A DNA stretch of 59,630 bases from Macrostomum lignano (taxonomy: Eukaryota): the NCBI GenBank assembly GCA_002269645.1, contig NIVC01004118.1, positions 1 to 59,630 on the forward strand, written 5' to 3'. Of the stretch, positions 10,386-59,291 are shown piece by piece. A program made the position numbers and the translations under genes. The stretch's first letter is position 1; each line of letters begins with the position of its first letter. The notes beneath the pieces are model-generated. The model saw only the letters and a program-made list of their open reading frames with translations. It was not told the DNA's origin and made no database searches.

Positions 10386-11025
10386 TTATCGCCTCTTGTA
10401 CGATCCTTTAAGACAACTGTCCCTATAAAATATTGATCATTTCCATGGCAACCGAGCAAAAACAAAATCGCTTTGAATGAGTTACCAAAGTACTTTTCCT
10501 GCAGCTAAAAGAACTAAAAAACCTGCATAGAAAAAACTGTCAAAAACTGAAACGCAGCATTATTTGAACAACAACAAATTGATACTTTTTTGGCAAAACC
10601 ATTCGCGTAAACAACAACAGATAACCTGCAAGCATAGAACTACAGAGCTGCAAAATCCAATGCAATAGAAAATATAGACATTACTTTAATAACAAAATTA
10701 AGCATTGACAGCGAAGCAATCCTGGCGCCAAAGATTGGCTGATAATTGACTCGCGCAAGCCGAAAGCAGAAACCAGACAGACTTCAGACGGGCAAAAAAC
10801 ACAAACAACAAAAGCAGCAAATGTACGAGCAAGCACATTTTAAAGCAGCGTGGGGCACAACCAGCAGTGAACTAATTTTTAAAGAGAATTCTGTTTAAGA
10901 AATATTTTCAGAAACAAATAAAATTACAATTTACGTAAGATTAAAAAACAAAAGTAGGTACAAAAACACGACAAAATCAAATATTGTTGAAATACAAAGC
11001 ACACTACTAGCCGCCTGGCATTGAG

Positions 11026-19790: not shown

Positions 19791-22324
19791 AGTAGTAGTT
19801 CTACTGATAGTATGGAGCCCTGATATATGCACATTATTTTTAATAAGCAGCAGTGCCCTCCAAATAGTTCAAATTCGCTAGCGCTATCTGTGATGAATCG
19901 ATGTATTTAAATTGAGAGCATTCATACATTGGTAGCGTATGGGGGGATAAGCCTTCAAACATTTCTAAGAAACGATAATTGTCGCAACCTACATTTATTT
20001 CGTGGGGGTGCGGATCCACTACTTCAATATGTTTAGTCCGTCAATACTCATTAGAAACCGCGCTGAGAAACTCCATTTCTGATTAAATCAATGACAAAAA
20101 ATCTATGCAAAAAGAACCAAAGCAAATTGCATTTGACGATAATAGAAATAATCTGTCAAGTAGTAACTGTATATTTCAGAGACGAAAAAATGAACATCAA
20201 ATAAAACGCAATTAACGCGGCTCCTATAAAAGTAAACAACAGGTTCCGCAAAATCCTACTTTAAAGCTGCTAATGAGTTATGGACTTACATCGCAGAGCT
20301 ATATGCTATTCGCCTGTAATAAACGAGGCAGGGACAATGGAAAATTCTACGATTTTGCTAGCACCTCCTACAGTCGCTTCCGCTTGCCAAGTGCAGTTGG
20401 AGGAGTTGAATCTCATCGGTGCTCAACATTCTATTTGTCCGGTTAATAATTATATAGTATAACGGACGAATCAGCGAGTGAAAGCGTTTCAACCCGACGA
20501 GATACAACTCTCTCCACTGGACCTGCAAGACTTGATGGTCTGGTGCTGCGCGAACTGGGATTGTATAAGGCGAATCGCCGAGCAGCATGGAACCAGGCCG
20601 GTTCCTCTTTCCTGCAGCGCTTAGCTATAGAAAGGAGGAGAGGCCACTCGAGTCCCCGTGCGCGGGGCTTTATTATTTCAGTCGATCCCTTATCTCTGCT
20701 GAGCTCTCTCCGAGCTTGGATAAGATAAAGGGCCCTTCGTTCCATTCGAATGGGCGGGTGAGGGCTCTGGACACGCGCGCTGTGCCATTGTGCAGGCGCA
20801 CGTTTCTGGCTTGTTGCTGCGGCTATCTACACGTAATACGCTATAGATTAGCTATGGACCCATGCGTTTAGGCGTGCAGTGTGTTCCCAGTCCCACACAG
20901 GCTTATAAAGTTAAATCTTATTGATTTTCCGACAATACGGTGTATCTCAGTCTCGGCCAGGGTCTCGGTCCACCCTTGAGAAACTTTATTATCGGACCTG
21001 CTATCGGTATAAGCCGCTGCCCCCATGCTGTATCAATTGCCTCGAGCTTATTCGAGTTTACTCAGGCTCGGTTCAATATTATTCGATCCTGATAAAAAAC
21101 AGGCCTCAAATATATGGCTTTAGCTGCAACTTGACTCTGTTTACAAGGCTTGGGTGGGGGTGGCTGTGCCATTGAATGCAGCAATTTGGTGTCAATAATA
21201 ACGCCTGGAGATTGCGCACGACTTTGCAGAGGTCACCCATTAAGCCTGCTCATGCAGTCCAAAATATTCCTAATAAGGTGGAGGACTTTGACCCCCATCT
21301 GAGAAAAATGTGGATTCGATATTCATTCAGTTTGTTTTCAGGAAATTTTGAGCTCAGTTAATGCTAGAGTTTGAAAATGCCTGGACAATACTTCTGCGCT
21401 GCGATACGGCCAGAGCATTCATTTGACCACCTGACCCGCCAAAGTTTTACAATTGTATGATATTCCATACTGTGCTGGAGTCTTAACTTGTTGGGCCTCG
21501 AACTACTGCCAAATATTCTGAAAAGTATTCTGTATTTCGCTTTCTGTAGATTAGACAATACAAGTGCAATACAATGCATAACTCTGCTTCACTTCTTTCG
21601 GAGAAAATCTTCTCCCGGCGGGGAAAAAGGGTGCCCTGGCTGCTGCTAAATATCCGATCATGTAAACAGCCCGTGTGACTTCTTTTTAATCTAAATACAA
21701 TTCTACAAAATGTAGAAAACAACTCAACAAAAACTACCATAACTGTGGTCGCTCCCGCTTTTAGCGTCTTCATGTTCTCTTAACTCTACTGCAAGTAATA
21801 CATAAACTATGCTGTGACTGCAACATAACAATAGTTAATTGGATTGTGTTTATAAGTGTCTAAAGTTGCTATAAAAAAGCACCAGTACCGGTATTGAAGG
21901 AGTCTGACCTATACACTGTTATTCTTCATCATCTTCATTATCCCACCATTCGTCCTTCGTTGCACTTGAATACGAGAAGCCAAGCGAGAAAAGTTGATAG
22001 AATGAATTAATATAAACTTTAAGCCCTTATTCTAAGGACGCTCGCAAGTTGCCATTTCCCCCGGCTATGATAAATACAAGCATTTAGCTGCAAAACTTTC
22101 ATGCGATAGAGTCTAGAGAGAAGAGGAGAGTAGAGGAGAGAGATTAGAGAGAAGGGAGCTGAGAAGACACAAACCTTGAGCTGGCCGGATGCCAAGCCGA
22201 TCCGTTATCGATACTTTACAGGCTTAGGCTACAGGCAACTGAGTGAGTGAGCACCGGTCCTTCATTCCTCTTTGGTAGCAGGAGTGGTATAAGAATTTTG
22301 CTGCCTTAAACCAACTGCCAAACT

Positions 22325-23032
22325 TAACCCTAACCTAGACCCAACCTAAACCCTAACTCTAGCTCTAACCTAGACCCAACCTAAACCCTAACTCTAGCTC
22401 TAACCTAAACCCAACCTAAACCCTAACTCTAGCTCTAACCTAGACCCAACCTAAACCCTAACTCTAGCTCTAATCTAGACCCAACCTAAACCCTAACTCT
22501 AGCTCTAACCTAGACCCAACCTAAACTCTAACTCTAGCTCTAACCTAGACCCAACCTAAACCCTAACTCTAGCTCTAACCTAGACCCAACCTAAACCCTA
22601 GCTCTAGCTCTAACCTAGACCCAACCTAAACCCTAACTCTAGCTCTAACCTAGACCCAACCTAATTACTAACTCTAGCTCTAACCTAGACCCAACCTAAA
22701 CTCTAGCTCTAACCTAGACCCAACCTAAACCCTAGCTCTAGCTCTAACCTAGACCCAACCTAAACCCTAACTCTAGCTCTAACCTAGACCCAACCTAAAC
22801 CCTAACTCTAGCTCTAACCTAGACCCAACCTAAACCCTAACTCTAGCTCTAACCTAGACCCAACCTAAACCCTAACTCTAGCTCTAACCTAGACCCAACC
22901 TAAACCCTAACTCTAGCTCTAACCTAGACCCAACCTAAACCCTAACTCTAGCTCTAACCTAGACCCAACCTAAACCCTAACTCTAGCTCTAACCTAGACC
23001 CAACCTAAACCCTAACTCTCGCTCTAACCTAG
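22325..23032. repeat. 35-bp satellite AACCTAGACCCAACCTAAACCCTAACTCTAGCTCT, about 20 copies, built of telomere-like hexamers
   Basis: 35-bp periodicity; contains CCCTAA and single-mismatch variants. Confidence 0.95.
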
Positions 23033-23155
23033 AACATCGGCAGTCAAATTGAGCCAACCGGATTCAGTAAGTCTACCGATCTAGCATTTACCAGTGTTGC
23101 CAAAAAGTGTGATTCGAACTAGCATGACCGGTTTCTGAGACGTATTAAAGCAGTT

Positions 23156-24154: not shown

Positions 24155-27100
24155 TCACTTCATTCTGGCGTCGTTAGCCTTAGTAATCTCTTTAGTCAGC
24201 TCCTCCTTATAGGAGAAGATGTCGCCTTCCCACTTGGTCACTTTGCAATTGTTGCACTCCCAGATTTCCTCTGCCACCTGTTGAATGAGTCGGAAATCGT
24301 GACTGACCAACAGCAGGCCGCCCTGGAACTCGCAGATGGCCTCGGCCAGAGCGTCAATAGTCTCGATGTCCAAGTGGTTGGTCGGCTCGTCCAGCAGCAG
24401 CATGTGCGGCGATTTGTTGGCCAGCCAGGCAAAGATAATTCGGCATCGCTGTCCGTCGGACAGTGTCCGAATCGGGCACACCTGCTGGGCCCCAGTTAGT
24501 CCGTATCGGCCGAGTATTTTGCGCATCTCGTCCCGTTCTGTAATCTCGGGAAACTGGCGCATCATCCAATCTAGCGAGGTCAGCGATATGTCCAGCATCT
24601 CGTGCAGGTGCTGATGATAGCGACCGATTCTAACGTGCGAGTGCCGCCTGATGAGGCCGTCAGTTGGCTGCAGCTCGCCGGCGATCAGCTTCAGCAGAGT
24701 GCTCTTGCCTGAATTGCAGCAGCGCGTTAAGTTTAAAAAAAAATATTTTTAAGCTACTGTTAGTAGCTGATTTGGTGATTACATTATTTAAATAGAGTAT
24801 TATACAGTTTGCTGGTAAAGGCATGTTCTTCGGGGAGTAGATTTCTGAGAATAGTAAACTTCAAATACGAACTAACCTCTATGTATTATGGATCTATATC
24901 TATTGAGATATAGATTTGTCCATAGGATATAGATTTGTCCATAGGATATAGATTTGTCCATAGGATATAGATTTGTCTATAGGGATATAGATTTGTCCAT
25001 ATGATATAGATTTGTCCATAGGGATATAGATTTGTCCATAGGGATATAGATTTGTCCATAGGATATAGATTTGTCTATAGGGATATAGATTTGTCCATAG
25101 AAATATAGATTTGTCCATAGAAATACAGATTTGTCCATAGGGATATAGATTTGTCCATAGGGATATAGATTTGTCCATAGGGATACAAATTTTTCCATAG
25201 GGACTTAGATTCATCTCTAGGGACAGATTTGTCTCTAGGTCATAGATTTGTCTCTAGGGACATAGATTTGTCTCTAGGTCATAGATTTGTCTCTAGGGAC
25301 ATAGATTTGTCTCTAGAGATATAGATTTATCTCTAGGGATATAGATGTGTCTCTAGGGACATAGATTTGTCTCTAGGGATATAGATGTGTCTCTAGGGAT
25401 ATAGATTTGTCTCTAGGTCATAGATTTGTCTCTAGGGACATAGATTTGTCTCTAGAGATATAGATTTATCTCTAGGGATATAGATGTGTCTCTAGGGACA
25501 TAGATTTGTCTCTAGGGATATAGATGTGTCTCTAGGGATATAGATTTGTCTCTAGGTCATAGATTTGTCTCTAGGGACATAGATTTGTCTCTAGAGATAT
25601 AGATTTATCTCTAGGGATATAGATGTGTCTCTAGGGACATAGATTTGTCTCTAGGGATATAGATGTGTCTCTAGGGATATAGATTTGTCTCTATGTCATA
25701 GATTTGTCTCTAGAGATATAGATTTATCTCTAGGGATATAGATGTGTCTCTAGGGACATAGATTTGTCTCTAGGGATATAGATGTGTCTCTAGGGATATA
25801 GATTTGTCTCTAGGTCATAGATTTGTCTCTAGGGACATAGATTTGTCTCTAGGGCCATAGATTTATCTCTAGGGATATAGATGTGTCTCTAGGGATATAG
25901 ATTTGTCTCTATTAGATAGAGATAATACATATGAGTCCAGACTCAATCTCAATAACAGCAAACAAAATCCGAATCAATAAAAAAGCACACTCACCAGCTC
26001 CATTTGGACCAACCAGAGCCACTCGGGTGTCCAGATCCACGCCAAAGTCCAGATCTTTATAGATAAAAGGCTTGCCAGGCGCGTACTGGAAGCTGACATT
26101 CTGAATCATAATCACTGGCGGCGGAATCTCGCCACAGTCGGGAAAGTAGAACGTGACAGTTTTGTCGTGAGCAACCCGGTCTGTCAGGCCTTTGTCAACC
26201 ATCTTAGCCAGGGTTTTCTCTTTGCTCTGGGCCTGCCTAGCCAGCTTAGCCGAGCCGTGGCCAAACCTGGCTATGTAATTGCGCATGTTGGATATCTGGC
26301 CCTGCTCCCATTTGAATCGCTTCATCTGGTTCTCCTCCATCTCCATGCGAGTCTGCATGTACTGATCAAAATTGCCGCCATAGTAGATCAGGCGCTTGTG
26401 CCGCATATGGATTATATTAGTGCAGACGCCGTTGAGAAAGTCCTGAGAATGGCTGATGATGACAAGGATTCGCTTGTACTGCTTCAGCTCCTCCTCAAGC
26501 CAGACGCAGGCGTTCAGATCCAGATGGTTGGTGGGCTCGTCCAGCATCAGCAGGTCTGGCTTCACGAACAGAGCCCTGGCCAGGGAGATGCGCATGCGCC
26601 AGCCGCCGCTGAAGTGCTTTACCTAGCAGGTTGGGGTGCAGAGCTCCGTGAACCCCAGGCCGTGCAGAAGCTAATCATGCTACTATCAGTAGGGAAATGG
26701 CATACTATACAGATTATTTACCTGTTTGTTCTGCATCTCGGCCGTGCAGAAGCTAATCATGCTACTATCAGTTGGGAAATGGCATACTATACAGATTATT
26801 TACCTGTTTGTTCTGCATCTCGGCCGTGCAGAAGCTAATCATGCTACTATCAGTTGGGAAATGGCATACTATACAGATTATTTACCTGTTTGTTCTGCAT
26901 CTCGGCCGTGCAGAAGCTAATCATGCTACTATCAGTTGGGAAATGGCATACTATACAGATTATTTACCTGTTTGTTCTGCATCTCGGCCGTGCAGAAGCT
27001 AATCATGCTACTATCAGTTGGGAAATGGCATACTATACAGATTATTTACCTGTTTGTTCTGCATCTCGGCCGTGCAGAAGCTAATCATGCTACTATCAGT

Positions 27101-27917
27101 TGGGAAATGGCATACTATACAGATTATTTACCTGTTTGTTCTGCATCTCGGCCGTGAACCCCAGACCGTGCAGAAGCTCCGCAGCCCTGGTGGCGGCCTT
27201 GTCAGCGTCTAATTCTTCCAGCCGATCGTAGATGTCCATCAGGCGATCGTGAGATTCCTGATCTTCGTGCAGAGCCAGAGCCTCGGCCTCGGTCTCCAGC
27301 CTGACGCGCTCCTCGTCAACTTCCATGACGCACTGTATCGCAGTTTTGTCAGACGGCGGCATCTCGCGTTGCAACAGGAAAATGTCCACATGCGGCTGAA
27401 TCTGCAGCTCCCGGTTGGCCAGCGCGGCCAGCAGGGTGCTCTTGCCGCAGCCGTTCAGGCCAATCAGGCCGTAGCGCCGGCCGCAGTTCAGCTCCAGCTT
27501 GGTGTCCTGCAGCAGCTCCTGGCCGTGGAAGGTGATGCTCAGATTAATTAGCTGAATATCGCGAGCGTCGGGGTGGCTGGCTAATACGCTGGTGCAGGCC
27601 CGGTGCGCCACCACCCGGTCAGACAGCAGGTTGAGAGTCTCAATCTCGCTGGCCAGAGCGCTTGGCATGTCGTCGTCTGAGCCCATGAAATCTTCGTCCT
27701 TGTCGGCCGAGGCGGAGGCAGCGGCGGCGCCATTGGCCGAGGAGGCGCCAACAGTTTCAGTTCCGTTAGGCCCAGTCTCCGGCACTTCATCGCCTGCCGC
27801 GCTGCCAGCTTCATCTTCATTGTCGCGCTGCTGCTGTTGCAACGGTTTCTTAGCGTCCTTGCGCTTGGCGGCGTCCTTTTTAGCTTGGGCTCGCTTCTTC
27901 TTGTGATCGGATGGCAT
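24155..27917 (-). CDS. ABCF2: ATP-binding cassette sub-family F member 2 (soluble ribosome-associated ABC ATPase), 655 aa. Exons 27917-27132, 26622-25995, 24708-24155
   Basis: N-terminus [14 protein letters not shown]; two NBDs with Walker [10 protein letters not shown] and GPNGAGKST, signatures FSGGWRMR and LSDGQRCR, Walker [11 protein letters not shown]; no TM domains; exon phases 0 and 1 consistent. Confidence 0.95.
24905..25910. repeat. 19-20-bp minisatellite (GGGATATAGATTTGTCCATA, then GGGATATAGATTTGTCTCTA) in ABCF2 intron 2
   Basis: Direct periodicity, two sub-arrays. Confidence 0.95.
26659..27155 (-). repeat. 82-bp tandem repeat x6 forming ABCF2 intron 1; each unit contains the exon-1 end and donor site
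   Basis: AAACAG|GTAAAT donor copies at 27131, 27049, 26967, 26885, 26803, 26721. Confidence 0.95.
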
Positions 27918-28034: not shown

Positions 28035-28320
28035 GGTGGCTGCAGCCTAGTGGTTAGAGCGTTGGAAGCACGATTTGAAGGCCCGAGGTTCGATTCCCAA
28101 TCCCACTGCAACAGTTTGTGTCCTTGAGCAAGACACTCAACTCTGCTTTGCTTCAGTTCATCCAGCTGTAAAATGGGTGCCAGCATTAGCTGGGGTAATT
28201 GAGGGTGTGTGTGGCGACCCCCCAGTCTTTGGACTGAACAGCCATGCACAGCCTTCAGATGTGCTACACAATAGCTGTGGCTGAGCTGTCGGTTGCACAT
28301 CTACCCATTAGGGTAGGCCT
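28035..28320 (+). mobile_element. tRNA-derived CORE-type SINE, copy 1
   Basis: A box CAGCCTAGTGG, B box GGTTCGATTCC; TGTGTCCTTGAGCAAGACACTCAAC...CAGCTGTAAAATGGG resembles the MIR/CORE domain; 3' hairpin; second copy at 38724. Confidence 0.85.
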
Positions 28321-28964: not shown

Positions 28965-29124
28965 TGGGCGCAACCTAGGGATTCACCTGGCTGTTTCTAT
29001 TGGCAACACACACATGTAAGTTGCTATTGGACAGAATAGTAGTCACAAGACTGCTCTCAGCCAATAGCAACTTGCATGTATATGTTGCCAATAGAAATGG
29101 CCAAGTGATTCCCAAGGTTGCCCA
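28965..29124. mobile_element. Fully palindromic (foldback) MITE, ~160 bp
   Basis: Arms TGGGC..AACCT.GGGA.TCAC.TGGC..TTTCTATTGGCAACA...AAGTTGCTATTGG pair with the reverse half; partial copy at 15936. Confidence 0.8.
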
Positions 29125-29674
29125 TGTATATTTACAAACATGCCACTAACTCCATTGGAGAAGCAAAGTGGCCAAAGAAGAAGGTTAAGAAAGGTGTTTT
29201 CTGCTTTTTTCAGACTTAATTTCGAATTTTTCAACATTTAAATAGCCTATTTGTTGCATAGGAAAATTTTGCATTGATATATATAAGTCCCACATTTAAG
29301 TTGGCAGCTGTCAAGGAGGAGATTGTATTAAACCTGGCTGGTCAATCTAATGATTAATCAATTAATCCACTCAGCTTTAGATATAAGAGATACTTTTATT
29401 TAGGCTTTATTTGTGCTGATACAATATTATCCAATATTATCAAAACCAGTTGATGAATTAAAAATTGAAAAACTTTATAGCATTTTTATATTAATTTTTT
29501 ATACTGTAACTCTAGTCTTATTAGACTTTATAAAAAGCTAACTTTATTTTAAGTTAAGTAACTTAAATGATTTAAAAATAATAGATCTTATAAGTAGAGT
29601 AGCTCACTTAATAAATAGGAATAAAATGAATGAGAGAACAAACATTAACTTGTTTTTATTTACTTTAATTCAAT

Positions 29675-29714
29675 TGCCAATGCATTTCAACCCTTGTAGG
29701 TCATTGTCAGGGCA
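29675..29714 (-). ncRNA. Decayed minimal type I hammerhead ribozyme of the PLE 3' pLTR
   Basis: TGCC-CTGACAA-T-GACC-TACAAG-GGTT-GAAA-TGCA-TT-GGCA, followed by AATAAA. The inverted copy at 30979 retains GGTCGAAA, the unmutated stem II. Confidence 0.7.
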
Positions 29715-29879
29715 GTAGTGAAATTGAAAATTCTAATAAACAGTTGAATAAATATACCTATGATAAGTTGAATACACAATATAAATTATTGTACGTAGCT
29801 TTCAATCAAAACAAGTTAACACACGGTGTAGTAGCGTACATTCCAAGCTAAAATATGCTGAGTTGGTGGCTGGCACCTC

Positions 29880-30975
29880 CCATAGCTAGCTGGCAGTTTA
29901 GGCTTGGGTTCTGATCTTTGATGTACATAGCCTCTAAGATATTCAAAGCGTGCTCATGGCGGCAAGAATCGATAATCTTAAATAAATCAATTGGTTTGCT
30001 GTTACAGCATGAGTTGCATGTGAGAAGGTGCTCCTGTACAGCAGATCTTTTGGTCTAGTGCTCCTTGACCCTAGTGTACAAGTGTCGCTTAGTTTTTCCT
30101 ATGTACGAAATACTCTGGTCGCCAGAGCATTGAAATTTATAAATGACACCTGCATTGAGAGGCCGAGGGACATGGGACTTCAAGTTGCAGACATACTGGG
30201 ACACCTTCTCTGTGCAGAATGTGATCCTAAGCTAAACATTGAGGCTTTTTTGAACAGTTTTTCAACTTTCTTCTTAAACTCAATAGAGCATAGGCCAAAA
30301 AATGGCAACACAATTGTAGGGCTATTCGTTTCTCTAGCATTATACTCCTGAGTGCTCTGTTGATTAGTCAGCTTGTTATTTAAAAACTGGTTCACAATGC
30401 GAGACACATAGTTCCTAGGGTAACCATTCCCAATGAGATGGCCAGTAAGCTGTTCCACCTCATCATGAAACAGTTTCTAGGAGCTACAGATCAGAAAAGC
30501 TCTATGCAGAAAGCAGCGAATCAGGCCATTCTTTCATTGCCATGGGCAGAGGGCATCAAATCTCAGCATAAGGCCGGTGAAGCTGGGCTTCCTAAAGACT
30601 TTAGTTTTGATCAGGTCATTGCTGATATCAATCTCCATGTCAAGAAAAGGGAGTTTAGTTCCTCCACCTTTGGTCGTGAATTTGATGTTAGGATGGGTAT
30701 GATTGATAGCATGGAAAAATTCTTCTTTTTCTTATCATTCTCAAAGATGGCAAAAGTGTCATCAACGTAGCATTTGTAAAACCGAGGCGAACACAGGAGG
30801 GCCATCCAGTCTTTTTCCCAATGGGCCATGCAAAGATTAGCCAGGGTGGGGGCAAGAGGGCTGCCCATGGCACAACCATCAATTTGCTTATAGTACCTAT
30901 CCCCGAACAGAAAGATACCAGAGGTGGCAAACCCGAGCATCTTTTTAAAGATGGTTTTCGGAAAAGGTGGATAAT
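29880..30975 (-). pseudogene. PLE RT/GIY-YIG ORF remnant with frameshifts and stop codons
   Basis: Frameshift near EEL/KLPFLD (~30655); TGA at 30534-30536; TAG near 30478; TAG after EH in the endonuclease. Confidence 0.88.
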
Positions 30976-31271
30976 CATGGTCGAAATGCATTGGCAATTG
31001 AATTAAAGTAAATAAAAATGAGTTAATGTTTGTTCTCTCATTCATTTTAGATCTTATAAGTCTTTTACTTTTTATTGATTTTGTAAAAAAGCAAAAATTA
31101 TCTATAGGGCCTAATGTATTAATAATTATCAAATAGTTATATACTTTGCAACTTGCCCTTGGTCTGCCATAATAATGATATATGTGCAATACCTACTTAG
31201 TTGACTTAGATGATCTAGCTAGGTAACAGGATTATCAGCGGCTAAAAGTGGGAATCGAACCATGCGGAGCA

Positions 31272-31314
31272 GACTGAGACCGGTTTTGGGCTTTTTTGCC
31301 CTCGTCAGTCAATC
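31272..31314 (-). ncRNA. Hammerhead copy 3, G12A core mutant
   Basis: GAAA reads AAAA; CUGACGA intact. Confidence 0.85.
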
Positions 31315-31663
31315 ATAGCCACACGAGGTCGGCTCCACCTCTAGCCAGCTGAGTGGAACTGCTATTTATGCGCCCTTGCACATGGCGACATTTTCTAGTC
31401 CACCATGTGAGGAATTCGCGCCATGCTCAAATAGCTTTACTATCAGTAAGCTATCGCTTACATCTTCCCGCTTTTCAAAGACTGGCACTCCTGCCAGTTC
31501 TCCCTTCTCGGGCCTTCTATTTTTAGGCGGCCAGAGGGTACACTTGTACGTCTTGTGCGCACATTTTTTTTTCGGCTCTCACCCTGTGGGTGGCCAGCGG
31601 GTACGCTCTCTGCAGGGAACCAGTTATCAGCGGCTAAAAGTGGGAATCGAACCATGCGAGGCA

Positions 31664-31706
31664 GACTAAGACCGGTTTCGGGCTTTTTTGCCCTTGTCAG
31701 TCAGTC
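31664..31706 (-). ncRNA. Hammerhead copy 2, G8A core mutant
   Basis: Core reads CUGACAA; otherwise the same as copy 1 with one G-U wobble in stem I. Confidence 0.85.
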
Positions 31707-32055
31707 ATAGCCACACGAGGTCGGCTCCACCTCTAGCCAGCTGAGTGGAACTGCTATTTATGCGCCCTTGCACATGGCGACATTTTCTAGTCCACCATGT
31801 GAGGAATTCGCGCCATGTTCAAATAGCTTTACTATCAGTAAGCTATCGCTTACATCTTCCCGCTTTTCAAAGACTGGCACTCCTGCCAGTTCTCCCTTCT
31901 CGGCCCTTCTATTTTTAGGCGGCCGGAGGGTACACTTATACACCTTGTGCGCACATTTTTTTTTCGGCTCTCACCCTGTGGGTGGCCAGCGGGTACGCTC
32001 TCTGCAGGGAACCAGTTATCAGCGGCTAAAAGTGGGAATCGAACCATGCGGGGCA

Positions 32056-32098
32056 GACTGAGACCGGTTTCGGGCTTTTTTGCCCTCGTCAGTCAGTC
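32056..32098 (-). ncRNA. Type I hammerhead ribozyme, intact core
   Basis: GACUGA-CUGACGA-GGGC-AAAAAA-GCCC-GAAAC-CG-GUC^UCAGUC: 6-bp stem I, 4-bp stem II, palindromic minimal stem III. Confidence 0.9.
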
Positions 32099-32828
32099 AT
32101 AGCCACACGAGGTCGGCTCCACCTCTAGCCAGCTGAGTGGAACTGCTATTTATGCGCCCTTGCACATGGCGACATTTTCTAGCCCACCATGTGAGGAATT
32201 CGCGCCATGTTCAAATAGCTTTACTATCAGTAAGCTATCGCTTACAAGGATTACTAATACAAGTATGTTGCAAAACTAATCCACTAAGCACCAAAATTAT
32301 TATGTATATACAAGACAAAAGCATTGAGAAACAAAATAAACAAGAGAAAAAAGATTTATGCTTATTATAAAAAGTGAATGCAAAATAAAAAATGGATATA
32401 TTATAGTGATATTGTATAAGGGAATTGCAAAAAGATAAGAAAGAAATAGTTTCCATGAGAAAGAAAATGATACACCTTAAAAGGGTTGCTTGACATGGAA
32501 TAAATTTTTAGGGCCTATAGACCCCATGGATGTTCACCTCAACTATAATCAGCTTTTATAATATAGTTGTTAAGCTGATACTAAATATAATAGATAGACT
32601 ACTACACACCAAGATTGCCACACTTGGAAGTGCTAAGGGAGAAATTTGGCTCAATTTGTTATTAGATAGTGCTAGAAAGGAGATAAATAGATAGTAGAGC
32701 TAGTAGGACAAGGCTGTGAGAAAGGAACCTATGAAAGGAATGGCAATGCTAGAAGATTGGTAGCTCCCCCTCAATACCAGTAGCCAGTAACTATGGCTAT
32801 GGGGGGGGTATGGCGGTCTTGGTATAGG

Positions 32829-38723: not shown

Positions 38724-39013
38724 GGGGTCGTAGCCAAGTGGTTAGAGCGGTGGACTCATGAATTGAAGGTCGGGGGTTCGATTCTCGACCTACTCGGAAC
38801 AACATGTGTCTTTGATGATTGCTTCAGTGCACCCAGCTGTAAAATGGGTGCCAGCATTAGCTGGGGTAATTGAGGGTGTGTGTGGCGACCCCCCAGTCCT
38901 TGGACTGAACAGCCGTACGCAGCCTTCAGATGCGCCGCGCAATAGCTGCGGCTGAGCTGTCGGTTGCACATCTGTCCATTAGGGCAGATGTAATCAATTA
39001 ATCAAAAATCAAA
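38724..39013 (+). mobile_element. tRNA-derived CORE-type SINE, copy 2, with TSD
   Basis: A/B boxes; body near-identical to 28140-28310; 3' stem-loop ACATCTG..CAGATGT; 14-bp TSD ATACTGACG(A/G)GAGG at 38710-38723 and 39014-39027. Confidence 0.88.
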
Positions 39014-42696: not shown

Positions 42697-43534
42697 TGCC
42701 CTCTTGGTCGGCTACTCAGCTTCAAATGCTCTGTTGAGCAGAACAAAACTCATTTTGACAATATACGAGTAAAAACAAGTTAAGCGGGTATATTTCTTTT
42801 TCGCTTGCCCGAGCTTGAGTAATTCATCCTTTTGCTCCTTCATCTTCTTAGGCAGCAGCCATTTTTTCTCTCGAATAAAATTCACCATCTCGAATTTTTT
42901 TCAACGAATATCTCTCGATGTTATAATTGTGCCTTGTTATTGTTGCATAAGCCTAATAAGCTACTTTGTTGCTAACTAGCTATATTACTTAAAAGTAGGA
43001 ATTTTCTAAATTTAGTTTCTTTTCGAAATTGTTGTGTTTTTTTGTTTATTTTCATTCCTTTATGATTTTAAAAGCATGCTTCACTTTGAATTATAAAAAC
43101 AAAAAAATCAATTGTTGTTGCGTGATAGAATTATCAAATCTAGTTTTTTGTTGTTTCTTTGAAGTTTTTTGAAGCAAATCTTGTTGCTTTTCGTTTGATT
43201 ATTTCTGCACTGAAGTTAATTGGAAATCATTCTGGCAACATATTCTAACTGTGCTTTTTCTTGCAGCTTAACTAAGAAAGGACTTTTCATTAATATTTAA
43301 TCTTTACACGCTTTGAAGTGACTTAGTTTGACAGAAAAACTTGGCACCTATTTATTACTTATAATAAATTTCAATTCATATTTACCACGCATCTTTAGAC
43401 TCGTAAATCAATAAGTTAATTTACAATTTATTAATTGCTTAGATTTTTTCCTTTAATGTAATTGAGGATGACGCTGTAATTTGAGAATGATGCCATGTGA
43501 GACAACTCGGAATGTCGCACAGCCCATTTTTGTA

Positions 43535-45245
43535 TCCTGTGAGGACGATGCTGTGTCAGACAGACCTCGGTCTGGTATCCTGTGAGGACGATGCTGTGTC
43601 AGACAGACCTCAGTCTGGTATCCTGTGAGGACGATGCTGTGTCAGACAGACCTCAGTCTGGTATCCTGTGAGGACGATGCTGTGTCAGACAGACCTCAGT
43701 CTGGTATCCTGTGAGGACGATGCTGTGTCAGACAGACCTCAGTCTGGTATCCTGTGAGGACGATGCTGTGTCAGACAGACCTCAGTCTGGTATCCTGTGA
43801 GGACGATGCTGTGTCAGACAGACCTCAGTCTGGTATCCTGTGAGGACGATGCTGTGTCAGACAGACCTCAGTCTGGTATCCTGTGAGGACGATGCTGTGT
43901 CAGACAGACCTCAGTCTGGTATCCTGTGAGGACGATGCTGTGTCAGACAGACCTCAGTCTGGTATCCTGTGAGGACGATGCTGTGTCAGACAGACCTCAG
44001 TCTGGTATCCTGTGAGGACGATGCTGTGTCAGACAGACCTCAGTCTGGTATCCTGTGAGGACGATGCTGTGTCAGACAGACCTCAGTCTGGTATCCTGTG
44101 AGGACGATGCTGTGTCAGACAGACCTCAGTCTGGTATCCTGTGAGGACGATGCTGTGTCAGACAGACCTCAGTCTGGTATCCTGTGAGGACGATGCTGTG
44201 TCAGACAGACCTCAGTCTGGTATCCTGTGAGGACGATGCTGTGTCAGACAGACCTCGTCTGGTATCCTGTGAGGACGATGCTGTGTCAGACAGACCTCGG
44301 TCTGGTATCCTGTGAGGACGATGCTGTGTCAGACAGACCTCAGTCTGGTATCCTGTGAGGACGATGCTGTGTCAGACAGACCTCAGTCTGGTATCCTGTG
44401 AGGACGATGCTGTGTCAGACAGACCTCAGTCTGGTATCCTGTGAGGACGATGCTGTGTCAGACAGACCTCAGTCTGGTATCCTGTGAGGACGATGCTGTG
44501 TCAGACAGACCTCAGTCTGGTATCCTGTGAGGACGATGCTGTGTCAGACAGACCTCAGTCTGGTATCCTGTGAGGACGATGCTGTGTCAGACAGACCTCA
44601 GTCTGGTATCCTGTGAGGACGATGCTGTGTCAGACAGACCTCAGTCTGGTATCCTGTGAGGACGATGCTGTGTCAGACAGACCTCAGTCTGGTATCCTGT
44701 GAGGACGATGCTGTGTCAGACAGACCTCAGTCTGGTATCCTGTGAGGACGATGCTGTGTCAGACAGACCTCAGTCTGGTATCCTGTGAGGACGATGCTGT
44801 GTCAGACAGACCTCAGTCTGGTATCCTGTGAGGACGATGCTGTGTCAGACAGACCTCAGTCTGGTATCCTGTGAGGACGATGCTGTGTCAGACAGACCTC
44901 AGTCTGGTATCCTGTGAGGACGATGCTGTGTCAGACAGACCTCAGTCTGGTATCCTGTGAGGACGATGCTGTGTCAGACAGACCTCGGTCTGGTATCCTG
45001 TGAGGACGATGCTGTGTCAGACAGACCTCGGTCTGGTATCCTGTGAGGACGATGCTGTGTCAGACAGACCTCAGTCTGGTATCCTGTGAGGACGATGCTG
45101 TGTCAGACAGACCTCAGTCTGGTATCCTGTGAGGACGATGCTGTGTCAGACAGACCTCAGTCTGGTATCCTGTGAGGACGATGCTGTGTCAGACAGACCT
45201 CAGTCTGGTATCCTGTGAGGACGATGCTGTGTCAGACAGAACTCA
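43535..45245. repeat. 43-bp minisatellite TCCTGTGAGGACGATGCTGTGTCAGACAGACCTCAGTCTGGTA, about 40 near-identical copies
   Basis: 43-bp periodicity, head-to-tail, no spacers. Confidence 0.97.
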
Positions 45246-45743
45246 GTTTGTGTCACAGTATTTTGTGCTCAAAACGTAGGCCTTTCTAAAGCAGCTGCTG
45301 CACACTCGTAGATGCCACTGTAGACGAAACAGCTTAAACCCCGATTAAAATACGCGAATTTCATATGAATGACTTCGTGTCACGCAGAAAGAAAACAAAT
45401 TAAGAACAAATTTTAATCTCTAGCAAGTGACTCGCTTGATAATTTCAACAACTAAAATGATTTTTCTTGGCTAGTTTCCATGACTCAGTTCGATGCAAAC
45501 AGCCACTGCTGCGAAGAACAGAAACCCCCACTTTGCATATCTTTCTTCTTTCTCAGCTATAGTCGCGATAAAATTAGCGAGCTTGGTGCAAGCAACTCTT
45601 CGTTGGCAAACGTAGGCCACAAAAAGTGTCCTTTTTGAACTCTTAAGTTTATAAAGTCCTGAGAGAAGGCTGAAAAACAATTTCAGGCAAAATAGTTTCT
45701 CAACACGCTCTCAACAGTAAAGGTTTGTTTAGCAGTTTATTTG

Positions 45744-48700
45744 ATGTCGTCGAAGGGATTGATCTTTGGCCTGCTGCTCCAGCTGCTCCTTCTGTGCAGC
45801 AGCTGCTTCGGCGCAGGGCAGCAGCGGCAGACTCCTGAGCTGAACCAAGCAGCAATTCGAGCTGTCCTCGAAGCCGCCATGCGCTGTCAGAACCTGCCGC
45901 AGGTGCACACAGCCGTGGTACACGCAGGCATTCACCTTTACAGCTTCCGGCTGCAGCTGCACTCGAACGGTTCGGTGACTGACATCCCCGAGGACTCCGT
46001 GCTGCTGCCGCTGGCCTCAATCAGCAAGGGAATGTTCTCTACAGCGCTGCCCTTCGTTCAGAAACAGCTGCAGGCCGACAGGAACGATCCCAATTTTGAG
46101 TGAGTGTCGGCTTCATGAACTAATTAAAAGTTAATTAAAATTTGGATTTTTCTCGACTACCTATTCTCTGACGCACCTACCGATAGCCAAGCTTCTCTCA
46201 GACACATCTACCGATAGCCAAACTTATCTCAGACACATCTACCGATAGCCAAACTTATCTCAGACACATCTACCGATAGCCAAACTTATCTCAGACACAT
46301 CTACCGATAGCCAAACTTATCTCAGACACATCTACCGATAGCCAAACTTATCTCAGACACATCTACCGATAGCCAAACTTATCTCAGACACATCTACCGA
46401 TAGCCAAACTTATCTCAGACACATCTACCGATAGCCAAACTTATCTCAGACACATCTACCGATAGCCAAACTTATCTCAGACACATCTACCGATAGCCAA
46501 ACTTATCTCAGACACATCTACCGATAGCCAAGCTTCGCTAAGACAAACCTACTGTAAATATAGACCGATTGTAATATTACTCAACTTTAAATAAACTTAA
46601 ATGAGAGTAAAGTATTCAAATCTATACATTCAATACTCCAAATTCGCAGTCTCCTGACAACCCCCATCAAGCAGCTGCTTGGTGACAGCGACTTCTGGTT
46701 CTTAGATCACGTGCGCACCGACGAGGTGACAATCGAGGACCTGACCAGCCACACAACGGGTCTAAGCAGGCACGACGCTCTGTCCCTCTGGTCCGGCATC
46801 AAGACAAAGGCGGAGCTCGCTGAACTCACCGGGCGGTTTAACGCTACGGGCACTTTCAGAGGCTCGTTCATCTACAATAACCTGGTGTGGACCATCGCGG
46901 ATCTGACTGTTGAACGCCTCACTGGCATGAATTTCACGGCCTATATGCGCAAGTTTCTGTGGCAACCGCTGGGCATGAACGGCGCGGTTGGCAGCTCTGA
47001 GGTGGACGCGCGCGGCCTGGTCGCCAAGCTGTTCCGGTCGTCGAAGCACTTCGGCTCAGGACCGGTGCCATTTGAACGCACCGATTTGGAGAGGTTGGAG
47101 TCGATATTTTTACAACTTTCCGCTGTATTGTTGACAAACACGCTCAGAGGGGTTCATTATGTATAACCCTGCACTTGGAATTAGACTGCTGATGACCTTA
47201 ATTGTGCGTTTCAAACACCGTCTACCGAACAGTAGCAAGAAAAGAATGAAGTGAATCCCTCATAGTGTTTAAAAAAATCGCACTGATAATGAAGTAGAAA
47301 TTTTAACGTGTATCCACAAGGTTTGAAGACCAATTCACCCGGTCCATAATCTCGTTATGCACGTTACGTCACAGTTTTACTGGCTGTTCTGTTTTTCCTT
47401 TCAGAACCTTGGACATTGTGGAGGCCGCAGGTGGCATCTACGCTCCACTAGGCGACATGGTGAAGTACATGCAGCACCACACCGCCGCAAACTATTCGAG
47501 TTTCCTGCCGCCGCCGCCGCCATTCAAGTCTGTCAACGGGTTCAATGCTGGACCAGCGTTCGATCCGCGGCTGCTGAACTACTCGAATGTCAGGCTGGCT
47601 GACCTGCCCGACATCGACACCGAGTCCTATGGGCACGGCTGGAGCCGCCAGTGGTACAGGGGTGAGCACTGAGGCACTGCTTTTACAGATTCCAGCAGAA
47701 ACAATTTCAGATGGATCCCTACAGTTCCCTTTCAGGTTCCTTTCAGGTTCCTTTCAGGTTCCTTTCAAATCCTTTCAAATCCTTTTAGATCCCTTCAGAT
47801 TCCTTCAGATCCCTTCAGCTTCCTTTAGATTCTTTAGATCCCTTCAGATCCTTTCAGCTACCTTCAGCTCTCTTCAGTTCCCTTCAGCTCTCTTCAGCTC
47901 CCTTCAACTCCGTTCAGCTCCTTTCAACTTTCAGCTTTCAGCTTTCAGCTTTCAGCTTTCAGCTTTCAGCTTCCTTTAGCTCCCTTCAGATCCCTTCAAA
48001 CCCCCTTCAGATCTCTTCGGATCCCTACAGATCCCTACAGCTTCCATCTCCCACCTGCACTGCAGACAGTCTGTCCTACGAGCACTCCGGCTCCGTGTTT
48101 GACGCCAACTGCCACCTGCGGGTACTACCGAAGCGCCGCCTCTCTGTGTTCGCCCACACCAGCCTGGGCCGGTCCGACTCGCCCTCACAGTCCACCTACG
48201 CCAACATTGTCAGCCAGTACATCACGGACCTGCTGTTGCAGAATTCCTCATATGTAACCCAGGAGAATGTGTGCTCGCTGCTCAGAGATAACTCTGCCGA
48301 ACCGCCAATTGTTGTACCGAGACGGTTGCTGAGCCAGGCTGATTTGCAGACCTGCGTTGGAAGGTGGGCTGTTAAATTTATTGGATCAGGTGTAGAATTG
48401 TTTAAAGCTTCTTGAGTTGACTTACAGGATTTGAAGCACCATGAATTGACCTACAGTATTTTGAGCATCATGAGTTGACTCACAGGACTTGAAGCATCAT
48501 GAGCTGACTCACAGGACTTGAAGCATCATGAGTTGACTCACAGGACTTGAAGCATCATGAGTTGACTTACAGGACTTGAAGCATCATGAGTTGACTTACA
48601 GGACTTGAAGCGTCATGAGTTGACTCACAGGACTTGAAGCGTCATGAGTTGACTCACAGGACTTGAAGCATCATGAGTTGACTCACAGGACTTGAAGCAT

Positions 48701-58570: not shown

Positions 58571-59291
58571 TAGAAGTATTGAAATCTGGCTTGAACCAGA
58601 ACTTAGACATGTAAAGTTATGAAAGTTTTTATATTTATTCTGAAAATTCCGCTAGTGGCAAATCGCGACAATCTTTATAGGCTACTCATAGTACTCTGAT
58701 GATACTTTTAGTCAGTAATTTTTTGAAGCATTACAAAAAACGTTTTACAATATCAGTAGGGTCAAAATGTTGATACAAGTTAATTTATCAGAGTTCTGTT
58801 ATTATTTTAGCAGTCGTTTAGTGAATATTTTGCTATTCATAATTATATAAAATATAAATCAACATTAACGCACCATATAATTTATATTTATTCAAATCAC
58901 ATATTTGTTTAAGCGCAATAATTTTATACAGTGGCTTACAAGTCAAATACACTTCATTATGTTAATGCTGCCTCCGAAGCATGCTAAAGTTTCATTAATT
59001 AATTGGCTTGCTACCAGTATAAAAGTACAGAGAGCATTAAAAAGTTAAGCTTTCAATAATTTCGAAATTCGAAAATTACTAACAAGTGAAAATCAAAATA
59101 GTAGCAATATGATTGCTTTAATAGTGTTTTAATAAAAGCAGTTGCTCCGAACAAAACTTCAACTTTGCAGGAGCTCGAAACTAAAAACCAAAAACTTGTT
59201 CAAGTCATAAGTTAACAGCAAATATGTTGTCATAATGGTAAGATTGATAATCAGCCAGAATTTTCCTTAATTTATAGGACTGAATCTTAGT

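What the first reader, a model, noticed from the sequence alone, without database searches (positions are those of the whole stretch)
31232..32246. Candidate retrozyme: 392-nt tandem units, each bounded by a type I hammerhead ribozyme
Seen: three hammerhead motifs on the minus strand exactly 392 nt apart (32056-32098, 31664-31706, 31272-31314), with a 6-bp stem I, GGGC/GCCC stem II and a palindromic minimal stem III (ACCGGU). The unit has several further hairpins (CUGGCA/UGCCAG, AUAGCUU..AAGCUAU, CAUGGCG/CGCCAUG, CGGCC/GGCCG) and no coherent ORF. Known: animal non-LTR retrozymes are tandem ~170-400-bp non-coding units with minimal type I hammerheads, processed to monomers/circRNAs and thought to be mobilised by Penelope-like elements; schistosome Sm-alpha is a flatworm precedent. 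Inference: this is a retrozyme family, possibly undescribed in this lineage, sitting ~180 bp from a PLE in the same orientation but using a different ribozyme from that PLE.
Basis: partly seen in the sequence, partly recalled or inferred. Interest (0 to 1): 0.85.

Follow-up and report, generated by a model that had tools for sequence, protein, structure and literature searches.

The report
Decaying hammerhead-ribozyme tandem retroelement (retrozyme) copy
This is a short, mutating genomic copy of a known kind of animal "jumping" repeat (a non-LTR retrozyme) whose RNA is expected to cut itself into 392-nt pieces with a hammerhead ribozyme; it is a typical example of a known class, not a new kind of element.

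Summary
A 392-bp unit is repeated 2.6 times at 31232-32246, with 97% identity between copies. Each copy carries a type I hammerhead motif on the minus strand at the stated coordinates. Rfam matches HH9 at 34.7/30.5/29.6 bits (E = 1.6e-6), below the curated cut-off of 52.

- Only copy 1 (32056-32098) has an intact catalytic core. Copy 2 has G8>A (31695) and copy 3 has G12>A (31287).
- The array is flanked by a 7-bp target-site duplication, TAATCCT, so it arrived as one 2.6-unit insertion.
- Each unit carries a tRNA T-loop/B-box 11-mer (GGTTCGATTCC) 16 nt after the cleavage site.

The unit RNA is non-coding and folds far better than shuffled sequence (z = -5.1). Helix III is A[CCGG]U, too weak for a single motif. 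Two motifs are predicted to pair into a double hammerhead.

A dead, 5'-truncated Penelope-like element (29596-31047, minus strand) lies 184 bp away. It has its own 14-bp duplication and a different hammerhead-like motif in its tail.

Best reading: a decaying copy of a non-LTR retrozyme, probably mobilised by Penelope-like element machinery. This is a new member of a known kind. Copy number, RNA circles, cleavage and host species could not be tested.

The parts
31232..32246 (-). Tandem array of 2.6 units of 392 bp (unit 1 32246-31855, unit 2 31854-31463, partial unit 3 31462-31232). GC is 51.7% against 43% for the window.
   Evidence: TRF; BLAST of the unit against the window; column-by-column comparison
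32056..32098 (-). Hammerhead copy 1, the only intact core. C3-A9 = 32092-32086, helix II 32085-32072, G12-A14 = 32071-32069, A15.1-CCGG-U16.1 = 32068-32063, C17 = 32062. Predicted cut between 32062 and 32061.
   Evidence: Rfam HH9 34.7 bits, E = 1.6e-6, model 1-77; direct reading
31664..31706 (-). Hammerhead copy 2. G8>A at 31695 (core reads CUGACAA). Helix I has C>U at 31668, which gives a G.U pair.
31272..31314 (-). Hammerhead copy 3. G12>A at 31287 (reads AAAA instead of GAAA). Helix I has C>U at 31312, which gives a U.G pair.
32247..32253 (-). Target-site duplication TAATCCT, copy on the 5' side of the array (minus-strand sense).
   Evidence: Direct reading. In the simulation, 0.75% of random junction pairs share a 7-mer this close to both junctions.
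31228..31234 (-). Target-site duplication TAATCCT, copy on the 3' side. Its first 3 nt (TAA) also match the unit.
32035..32045 (-). tRNA T-loop / Pol III B-box consensus GGTTCGATTCC, 16 nt downstream of the cleavage site and followed by TTTT at 32028-32031. The same motif is at 31643-31653 and 31251-31261.
   Evidence: 5 matches in the window against 0.05 expected. It shares the 13-mer GGTTCGATTCCCA with the tRNA-SINE at 28087.
29596..31047 (-). Neighbouring dead Penelope-like element. It is 5'-truncated, with reverse transcriptase (YVDD) and a GIY-YIG-type endonuclease region broken by 2 frameshifts and 4 stops. It is flanked by the 14-bp duplication ACTTATAAGATCTA (31048-31061 and 29582-29595). 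An inverted 71-nt copy of its own tail lies at 30979-31049.
   Evidence: Three-frame translation; Pfam RVT_1; homologues with RVT_1 + GIY-YIG, best 83% identity; repeats D14 and I1
29675..29716 (-). Hammerhead-like 'min-HHR' motif in the PLE tail: (AC)UGCC | CUGACAA | U | GACC-UACAAG-GGUU | GAA | A-UGCA-U | U | GGCA. It has a C3/A8 core, an extra nucleotide between A9 and 10.1, and a palindromic helix III. It is unrelated in sequence to the array's hammerhead.
   Evidence: Direct reading. Features match the min-HHR description in PMC4209133. Not detected by Rfam at E <= 5.

Best explanation
The array is one genomic insertion of a non-LTR retrozyme. This is a non-coding, non-autonomous retroelement made of tandem 392-nt units, each with a type I hammerhead ribozyme.

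Proposed mechanism. All of it is inferred from the published retrozyme model except where marked as shown here.
1. A source copy is transcribed, probably by read-through, since no promoter is evident. The flanking genes at this locus are on the same (minus) strand.
2. The multimeric RNA self-cleaves after GUC. Helix III is only A-U closing a CCGG tetraloop, so a single motif is unstable. Two motifs pair through the palindrome ACCGGU into a double hammerhead. Shown here by prediction only.
3. [quoted passage not shown] A host tRNA ligase of the RtcB type joins them into highly base-paired circles.
4. A reverse transcriptase, most plausibly that of a Penelope-like element, runs more than once round the circle or along a multimer. 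The longer-than-unit cDNA is inserted at a staggered cut in AT-rich DNA. Shown here: a 2.6-unit insert bounded by a 7-bp duplication.

This particular copy has since decayed. There are 13 substitutions between copies, including G8>A in copy 2 and G12>A in copy 3. At most one catalytic core is still functional.

In a double hammerhead each core cuts the partner's site. The intact core of copy 1 could therefore still cut the sites of copies 2 and 3 and release one 392-nt unit. Its own site would be left to the weak single-motif reaction. This last point is inference only.
For: - 392-bp x 2.6 tandem array at 97% identity.
- A full-length Rfam hammerhead alignment in every unit, E = 1e-6 to 1e-4, with all 11 conserved core positions intact in copy 1.
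- The unit RNA, permuted to start at the cleavage site, has a minimum free energy of -153.6 kcal/mol against -120.1 +/- 6.6 for shuffles (z = -5.07, 0 of 100 shuffles as good). Its 5' and 3' ends pair into a long rod that extends helix I.
- The single-motif hammerhead fold scores -7.0 kcal/mol against -15.6 for an alternative fold. Two motifs co-fold at -34.3 kcal/mol with an intermolecular 6-bp ACCGGU helix and swapped helix I strands.
- TAATCCT lies directly on both sides of the array. An equivalent match occurs at about 0.75% of random junction pairs.
- No ORF with any homologue.
- An endonuclease-bearing Penelope-like element lies 184 bp away on the same strand, with its own separate 14-bp duplication. 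The genome therefore holds or held the proposed helper, and the two insertions were independent.
- The published description fits: 150-450-bp tandem units, type I hammerhead, no LTR/PBS/PPT, duplications longer than 4 bp, self-paired circles, co-occurrence with PLEs, and dimeric action when helix III is one base pair plus a palindromic tetraloop (PMC7229834; PMC7761336; PMC4209133).
Against: - Rfam scores are below the curated threshold (52 bits), mainly because loop 3 is absent.
- Two of three cores carry substitutions at guanines known to be essential for catalysis.
- No second copy of the unit was found in the window, in metagenome, viral or prokaryote-genome collections by exact 24-mer, or through pseudo-ORF translations in the protein collection. 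Multi-copy, mobile status is therefore unproven.
- GC is 51.7%, slightly above the '<50%' noted for animal retrozymes.
- No RNA data were available.
- The unit shows no similarity to the neighbouring PLE's ends. Nothing in the sequence links it to that helper in particular.
Confidence: 0.75

Rival explanations
1. The unit is not a separate element. It is the flanking repeat (pLTR) of an autonomous Penelope-like element of another family, left here as a tandem or solo pLTR remnant without its ORF.
For: - PLE flanking repeats carry type I hammerheads and PLEs insert as partial tandems (PMC4209133; PMC11167929).
- A 2026 preprint finds that Xenopus retrozyme families group as sister to PLE pLTRs (10.64898/2026.07.22.740005).
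- A related PLE from a metagenome (L002) has the same helix III, CGAAACCGGUC, in its tail.
- The array lies next to a PLE in the same orientation.
Against: - 2.6 uninterrupted units with no ORF between them, and a duplication that bounds the array alone.
- No similarity to the tail or any other part of the adjacent PLE.
- The hammerhead has the canonical build (6-bp helix I, 4-bp helix II, no extra nucleotide between A9 and G10.1). The PLE tails seen here (window and L002) have the min-HHR build, with an extra U and an A8 core.
- If retrozymes derive from pLTRs, this rival shades into the main explanation rather than contradicting it.
Confidence: 0.12
2. It is a tRNA-derived, Sm-alpha-like SINE. 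It would be transcribed by RNA polymerase III from an internal promoter and retroposed as a SINE. The hammerhead would be cargo, and the tandem form would come from local duplication.
For: - The exact B-box/T-loop consensus GGTTCGATTCC is present in every unit, 16 nt after the cleavage site and followed by TTTT. The window has 5 matches against 0.05 expected.
- The 13-mer is shared with a resident tRNA-SINE.
- Schistosome Sm-alpha combines a hammerhead with a tRNA-like region. About 2,300 Sm-alpha copies are called tRNA-Gln by tRNAscan (PMC2770079).
- ARAGORN at 80% threshold draws a cloverleaf over 32022-32104.
Against: - There is no A box on the hammerhead strand within one mismatch.
- Neither the Rfam tRNA model (E <= 10) nor default ARAGORN sees a tRNA.
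- The relaxed ARAGORN setting makes 24 calls in 59.6 kb, which is noise level, and the T stem has only 2 pairs.
- Homology to the SINE head does not extend beyond the T-loop.
- The TTTT would stop Pol III about 30 nt after the cleavage site, far short of a 392-nt unit.
- The insertion has no A-rich or simple-repeat 3' end.
- The duplication encloses 2.6 units, so the multimer was inserted as such.
Confidence: 0.08
3. It is an ordinary local tandem duplication (a minisatellite or satellite) in a very repeat-rich region, with a hammerhead-like sequence by chance or as an inert fossil. There would be no retroelement biology.
For: - The window holds dozens of tandem arrays.
- Rfam scores are below threshold.
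- Two cores are mutated.
- No other copy was found anywhere.
Against: - A complete hammerhead with all three helices and all core positions has E of about 1e-6.
- The unit is 392 bp, against 10-149 bp for most of the window's other arrays.
- GC is 9 points above the surroundings.
- The fold z-score is -5.
- A flanking 7-bp duplication marks an insertion, not an in-place duplication.
Confidence: 0.04

Closest known systems
Metazoan non-LTR retrozymes (Cervera & de la Pena 2020, PMC7229834), e.g. the ~350-390-bp Mytilus galloprovincialis repeats and the 330/350-bp axolotl repeats
   Same: - Tandem non-coding units within the 170-400-nt range, with one type I hammerhead per unit.
- No LTR, primer-binding site or polypurine tract.
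- A target-site duplication longer than 4 bp.
- A highly self-paired predicted RNA.
- PLEs in the same genome.
- Helix III is a single base pair capped by a palindromic tetraloop, as described for axolotl HHR_Amex1, which needs to act as a dimer.
   Different: - Only 2.6 units, and 2 of 3 cores are mutated.
- GC is 51.7% rather than below 50%.
- A tRNA T-loop/B-box motif lies inside the unit, whereas the published description says there is no promoter or conserved motif.
- Expression, circularity and copy number are unknown.
- Unit sequences are species-specific, so no sequence homology could be tested.
Newt satellite 2 / amphibian hammerhead repeats (Epstein & Gall; double hammerhead of Forster et al. 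1988)
   Same: - Helix III appears to be the same sequence, GAAACCGGUC. The 10-mer occurs in the newt satellite 2 paper PMC2114352 according to the full-text index. The context could not be read, so identity with the newt hammerhead rests on my memory.
- A ~330-390-bp tandem unit.
- The best Rfam match is HH9, the amniote hammerhead family; that it has been linked to the amphibian repeats is from memory, not read here.
   Different: The host is not a vertebrate. ABCF2 is only about 66% identical to vertebrate proteins over the conserved part, and a mir-1175 homologue points to a protostome. Helix I, loop 2 and the rest of the unit differ.
Schistosome Sm-alpha / Sj-alpha SINE-like hammerhead repeats (Ferbeyre et al. 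1998; PMC2770079)
   Same: A roughly 335-bp repeat with a type I hammerhead together with tRNA-related sequence. It is found both tandem and dispersed.
   Different: Here only a T-loop/B-box remnant is present, with no A box and no tRNA call. Helix III is much shorter than I recall for Sm-alpha's hammerhead, which I could not check here. There is no evidence that the host is a flatworm.
min-HHRs in the flanking repeats of Penelope-like elements (Cervera & de la Pena 2014, PMC4209133)
   Same: Type I topology, a palindromic 15.2-16.2 region, and presumed dimeric action. The relative in L002 has the identical CGAAACCGGUC.
   Different: - The array's motif has canonical helix sizes (6 and 4 bp) and no nucleotide between A9 and G10.1.
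- It is not attached to an ORF.
- The neighbouring PLE's own motif has a different sequence, with a C3/A8 core.

Membership tests
Non-LTR retrozyme | Short (about 150-450 bp) head-to-tail tandem repeats | tested here: met
   392 bp x 2.6 copies, 97% identity, no indels
Non-LTR retrozyme | A type I hammerhead ribozyme motif in each unit | tested here: inconclusive
   The motif is present in all 3 units (Rfam HH9 29.6-34.7 bits, below the gathering score of 52). The core is intact only in copy 1. Copies 2 and 3 have G8>A and G12>A.
Non-LTR retrozyme | Non-coding; no LTRs, primer-binding site or polypurine tract | tested here: met
   The longest ORF is 97 aa, antisense, with no homologues. There are no terminal repeats other than the tandem units themselves. 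PBS and PPT were not searched for with a dedicated tool.
Non-LTR retrozyme | Flanking target-site duplication, longer than the 4 bp of plant retrozymes | tested here: met
   TAATCCT at 32247-32253 and 31228-31234. An equivalent match occurs at 0.75% of random junction pairs.
Non-LTR retrozyme | Unit RNA predicted to be stable and highly self-paired | tested here: met
   -153.6 kcal/mol, z = -5.07 against dinucleotide shuffles
Non-LTR retrozyme | Self-cleavage of transcripts at the hammerhead site | not testable with these tools
   Only structure prediction was possible: the double-hammerhead co-fold at -34.3 kcal/mol.
Non-LTR retrozyme | Accumulation as unit-length linear and circular RNA | not testable with these tools
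   No transcriptome of the host was available.
Non-LTR retrozyme | Multi-copy, dispersed family in the genome | tested here: inconclusive
   No other copy in the window or in the metagenome, viral, prokaryote or protein collections. The host genome itself could not be searched.
Non-LTR retrozyme | Co-occurrence with Penelope-like elements carrying hammerhead variants | tested here: met
   A dead endonuclease-bearing PLE at 29596-31047 with a min-HHR-like tail motif
Canonical metazoan type I hammerhead | Conserved core C3 U4 G5 A6 N7 G8 A9 ... G12 A13 A14 ... A15.1-U16.1, H17, with a G10.1-C11.1 pair | tested here: met
   All present in copy 1, by direct reading and the Rfam alignment. Not met in copies 2 and 3.
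Canonical metazoan type I hammerhead | Tertiary contacts between loop 2 and the helix I bulge | not tested
   The layout is compatible: a UAU bulge 5' of a 6-bp helix I and an A-rich 6-nt loop 2, aligned over the full HH9 model. No structural test was done.
PLE min-HHR (pLTR ribozyme) | Located in the flanking repeat of a PLE ORF; extra nucleotide between A9 and 10.1; long helix II and short helix I | tested here: not met
   The array motif has no adjoining ORF, no extra nucleotide, a 4-bp helix II and a 6-bp helix I. The separate motif at 29675-29716 does fit this family.
tRNA-derived SINE (Sm-alpha-like) | tRNA-like head with A and B boxes; single units with an A-rich or repeat tail | tested here: not met
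   The B box is present. There is no A box on that strand, no tRNA by Rfam or default ARAGORN, and no tail. The insertion is a 2.6-mer.

The most novel reading that the evidence does not exclude
The family may be a chimera of a retrozyme and a tRNA-derived SINE in a protostome lineage where none has been described. A tRNA T-arm/B-box module sits 16 nt into the cleaved RNA. It would serve either as an internal Pol III/TFIIIC entry point or as a tRNA-like handle that recruits the tRNA ligase which circularises the RNA. Either role would address a gap in the retrozyme model: how these promoter-less repeats come to be transcribed, or how their RNA is handed to the ligase that circularises it.
Probability: 0.1. 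Interest if true: 0.55.

Novelty: new member of a known kind. Interest (0 to 1): 0.3.

Why it matters
If the family is active elsewhere in this genome, it adds one more lineage to the list of animals that make abundant small circular RNAs through hammerhead ribozymes. This locus is also a clean example of how such elements land: a longer-than-unit insert with a clear 7-bp duplication, next to but independent of a Penelope-like element. That supports the view that multimeric cDNA copied from circles or multimers is what gets integrated.

The locus also shows how these copies decay. Substitutions have hit the two catalytic guanines, and both changes fall at CpG sites.

The B-box remnant beside the cleavage site is a small lead on how promoter-less retrozymes might be transcribed or ligated.

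None of this changes what is known about the class.

Tried and rejected
- The default Rfam scan of the window found nothing. The hammerheads appear only with E-value thresholds. The whole-window E-value scan lists only copy 1 because of stricter filters.
- Default ARAGORN found no tRNA. Relaxed settings call a 'tRNA-Phe(aaa)' over the hammerhead, but also make 24 calls in the window, so I rejected it as noise.
- I looked for wider homology between the unit and the resident tRNA-SINE head. Only the T-loop matches. The second SINE copy gives no signal (36 of 300 shuffles score as well). The idea of a 'hammerhead replacing the anticodon arm of a tRNA head' was dropped.
- An A-box search found only chance-level hits, and the ones in the array are on the wrong strand.
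- Searches for relatives of the unit all came back empty: an exact 24-mer in metagenome, prokaryote-genome and viral collections; concatenated pseudo-ORF translations against 5.8 billion proteins; and an exact look-up of the 97-aa pseudo-ORF.
- A generic pattern, CTGANGA...CGAAACCGGTC, returned 120+38 loci, mostly chance. Twelve matches in eleven of these loci have proper helices I and II. None of those eleven is a tandem array of the hammerhead unit or related to this unit.
- Host identification failed. The best ABCF2 identity is 71% over the conserved part, spread across phyla. The nearest PLE (83% aa) is in an unnamed Logan assembly of run SRR31628435, and no paper mentions that run. The 444-aa neighbouring ORF is not on record.
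- Ferbeyre et al. 1998 (PMC108972) and the body of the newt satellite 2 paper could not be read.
- An apparent inverted TCTATAGGCCCTA pair around the array is too short and imperfect to count (D17).
Full report
**The observation.** Tandem Repeats Finder reports one array at 31232-32246 with period 392, 2.6 copies, 97% matches and no indels. BLAST of the first unit against the whole window finds the three copies (100, 97.7 and 97.8% identity) and nothing else.

Copy 1 reads GACUGA-CUGACGA-GGGC-AAAAAA-GCCC-GAA-A-CCGG-U-C-UCAGUC. This gives:
- a 6-bp helix I;
- the core C3-A9 at 32092-32086;
- a 4-bp helix II whose G10.1-C11.1 pair is intact;
- G12-A14 at 32071-32069;
- A15.1/U16.1 closing CCGG;
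- C17 at 32062.

Helices II and III are closed and helix I is open, so the topology is type I.

Rfam's default scan reports nothing. With E-value thresholds, the HH9 hammerhead model aligns end to end with all three copies at 34.7, 30.5 and 29.6 bits. E is 1.6e-6 to 7e-5, and the curated cut-off is 52. The score deficit comes mostly from the missing loop 3. The motif is real and not a chance match.

A column-by-column comparison of the copies shows 13 differences.
- Four of the eight differences in the region covered by all three copies fall inside the 43-nt hammerhead.
- Copy 2 has G8>A (31695) and copy 3 has G12>A (31287). Both are CpG-to-CpA changes at guanines known to act in hammerhead catalysis (established knowledge of the ribozyme).
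- The two helix I changes (31668, 31312) turn G-C into G.U pairs.

Only copy 1 therefore keeps an intact core. Twelve of the 13 differences are transitions and only three or four are at CpG. I have no firm explanation for that excess.

**The array is an insertion.** The sequence TAATCCT lies directly on both sides, at 32247-32253 and 31228-31234. In a simulation on this very repeat-rich window, 0.75% of random junction pairs share a 7-mer that close to both junctions.

The duplication encloses all 2.6 units, so the multimer arrived as one piece. In minus-strand sense the insert starts 184 nt upstream of the first cleavage site and ends 46 nt after the third. The array's GC content is 51.7%, against 43% for the window.

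**RNA properties.** The unit was permuted to begin at the cleavage site. It folds to -153.6 kcal/mol, against -120.1 +/- 6.6 for dinucleotide shuffles (z = -5.07).
- The isolated 43-nt motif prefers a non-hammerhead fold (-15.6 kcal/mol). The single-motif hammerhead fold with its one-pair helix III scores -7.0.
- Two motifs co-fold at -34.3 kcal/mol, with an intermolecular 6-bp ACCGGU helix and exchanged helix I strands. That is a double hammerhead.
- This agrees with the literature on hammerheads whose helix III is one pair plus a palindromic tetraloop. They cleave poorly as monomers and well as dimers (PMC7229834; PMC4209133).

No ORF matters. The longest is 97 aa on the antisense strand. 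Five pseudo-ORF translations from the array found no relative among 5.8 billion proteins.

**The neighbour.** Three-frame translation of the minus strand below the array shows a reverse transcriptase (…GSPLAPTLANL…YVDD…). It continues through two frameshifts and four stops into a GIY-YIG-type endonuclease region (…GVIYKFQC…YIGKT…).
- Pfam sees RVT_1 weakly.
- Homologues carry RVT_1, HTH_animal and GIY-YIG. The best, at 83% identity, comes from an unnamed Logan assembly.
- The element is 5'-truncated.
- It is bounded by a perfect 14-bp duplication, ACTTATAAGATCTA (31048-31061 and 29582-29595).
- At its 5' end it carries an inverted 71-nt copy of its own tail (30979-31049 against 29622-29692, 96% complementary).
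- Its insertion was therefore independent of the array's. The gap between them is 184 bp (182 bp if counted to the end of the inverted tail copy at 31049).

The PLE tail holds a hammerhead-like motif at 29675-29716. It has helix I UGCC/GGCA, the core CUGACAA, an extra U before helix II GACC/GGUU, then GAAA and the palindrome AUGCAU. These are the hallmarks of the 'min-HHR' of PLE flanking repeats, including the extra nucleotide between A9 and 10.1. The core has A8 with C3, and Rfam does not detect the motif.

A 45%-identical PLE from a metagenome (L002) has the known U3-A8 core variant and the same helix III, CGAAACCGGUC, as the array. The two ribozymes still belong to the same broad design.

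**tRNA-like sequence.** Sixteen nucleotides after the cleavage site every unit has GGTTCGATTCC, the tRNA T-loop / Pol III B-box consensus, followed by CAC and TTTT.
- The window has five matches against 0.05 expected: three in the array, one in a tRNA-derived SINE at 28035-28310, and one at 50277.
- The unit shares the 13-mer GGTTCGATTCCCA with that SINE, but no wider homology.
- There is no A box on the hammerhead strand.
- No tRNA is called by Rfam or default ARAGORN.
- The relaxed ARAGORN cloverleaf is at noise level.

The motif is a real tRNA-derived remnant. It recalls Sm-alpha, whose copies are called tRNA-Gln by tRNAscan (PMC2770079). Evidence for a working Pol III promoter is lacking, and the TTTT would end a Pol III transcript long before a full unit.

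**What it is.** All sequence-level features of the non-LTR retrozymes described by Cervera and de la Pena are present:
- unit size;
- one type I hammerhead per unit;
- no coding capacity and no LTR features;
- a duplication longer than 4 bp;
- a strongly paired RNA;
- PLEs in the same genome.

The hammerhead has the canonical metazoan build, with helix III as in amphibian repeats. According to the full-text index, the 10-mer GAAACCGGTC occurs in the 1986 newt satellite 2 paper. The passage could not be displayed, so the link to the newt ribozyme rests on my memory.

The proposed life cycle is taken from the published model and is not shown here. It runs from read-through transcription, through dimeric self-cleavage and circularisation by a tRNA ligase, to longer-than-unit reverse transcription by a PLE enzyme and insertion at AT-rich DNA. 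The only step this locus documents is the last one: a longer-than-unit insert with a duplication.

**Rivals.**
- *A pLTR of another PLE family.* This is the most serious rival, and a 2026 preprint argues that retrozymes derive from pLTRs. Against it here, the array is ORF-less, bounded by its own duplication, unrelated to the adjacent PLE, and has a different hammerhead build.
- *A Pol III SINE.* This fails on the A box, the tRNA fold, the 3' tail and the multimeric insert.
- *A chance satellite.* This fails on the Rfam E-value, the fold z-score and the duplication.

**Limits.**
- The host genome could not be searched.
- The host could not be identified. ABCF2 has no close relative. A mir-1175 homologue with a perfectly conserved 3p arm suggests a protostome (that mir-1175 is a protostome family is from memory, not checked here). 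CpG observed/expected of 0.68 hints at CpG methylation.
- No relative of the unit turned up in any accessible collection.
- Copy number, activity, circular RNA and 'new to this lineage' all remain open.

**Verdict.** It is a new member of a known class, and interest is modest.

Noticed in passing
window 20388-20525 (-): Homologue of the mir-1175 precursor: 43.9 bits (cut-off 51), E = 1.8e-9 locally. The 3p arm UGAGAUUCAACUCCUCCAACU matches the family consensus, but the terminal loop is 72 nt longer. From memory, mir-1175 is a protostome family, so the host is probably a protostome.
   Followed up: partly
window 28035-28310 (+) and 38732-38981 (+): Two copies of a tRNA-derived SINE (tRNA-like head with A and B boxes plus a conserved body, 92% identical over 163 bp). 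Copy 1 lies between the ABCF2-like gene start and the PLE.
   Followed up: partly
window 29582-31061 (-): The dead PLE has a perfect 14-bp target duplication and an inverted 71-nt copy of its own tail at the truncated 5' end. The inverted copy keeps GTCGAAA where the tail copy has GTTGAAA, a CpG decay in the hammerhead-like motif.
   Followed up: yes
L002 1786-1830 (+): A 45%-identical PLE from a metagenome carries, about 170 nt after its stop codon, a min-HHR with the U3-A8 core variant (UUGAGAA) and helix III ACCGGU, identical to that of the array's hammerhead.
   Followed up: partly
window 28970-29121: A near-perfect hairpin with 61-nt arms (87% complementary, 30-nt loop). It draws sub-threshold hits to several plant and animal miRNA models on both strands. 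It is probably a small inverted-repeat element rather than a miRNA.
   Followed up: no
window 24155-27917 (-): An ABCF2-like gene. The stretches between its coding ORFs, probably introns, hold very regular tandem arrays: 82 bp x 6.1 at 26658-27156 (99% identity) and 20 bp x 51 at 24907-25911.
   Followed up: no
window 31232-32246: Twelve of the 13 differences between the array copies are transitions, and only 3-4 are at CpG. Four of the eight differences in the three-copy region fall inside the 43-nt hammerhead. Numbers are small and the pattern is unexplained.
   Followed up: partly
window 8992-10386, 22330-23033, 43532-45247, 46165-46535, 48405-49116, 51746-52913, 55485-56060, 59288-59626: An unusually dense set of long, very homogeneous minisatellites (23-43-bp units, 12-44 copies, 90-99% identity) is spread across the window. 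A short interstitial TTAGGG run lies at 57223-57267.
   Followed up: no
window 50277-50287 (+): A further exact B-box/T-loop consensus (GGTTCGAGTCC) lies outside the two SINE copies and the array. The context was not analysed.
   Followed up: no
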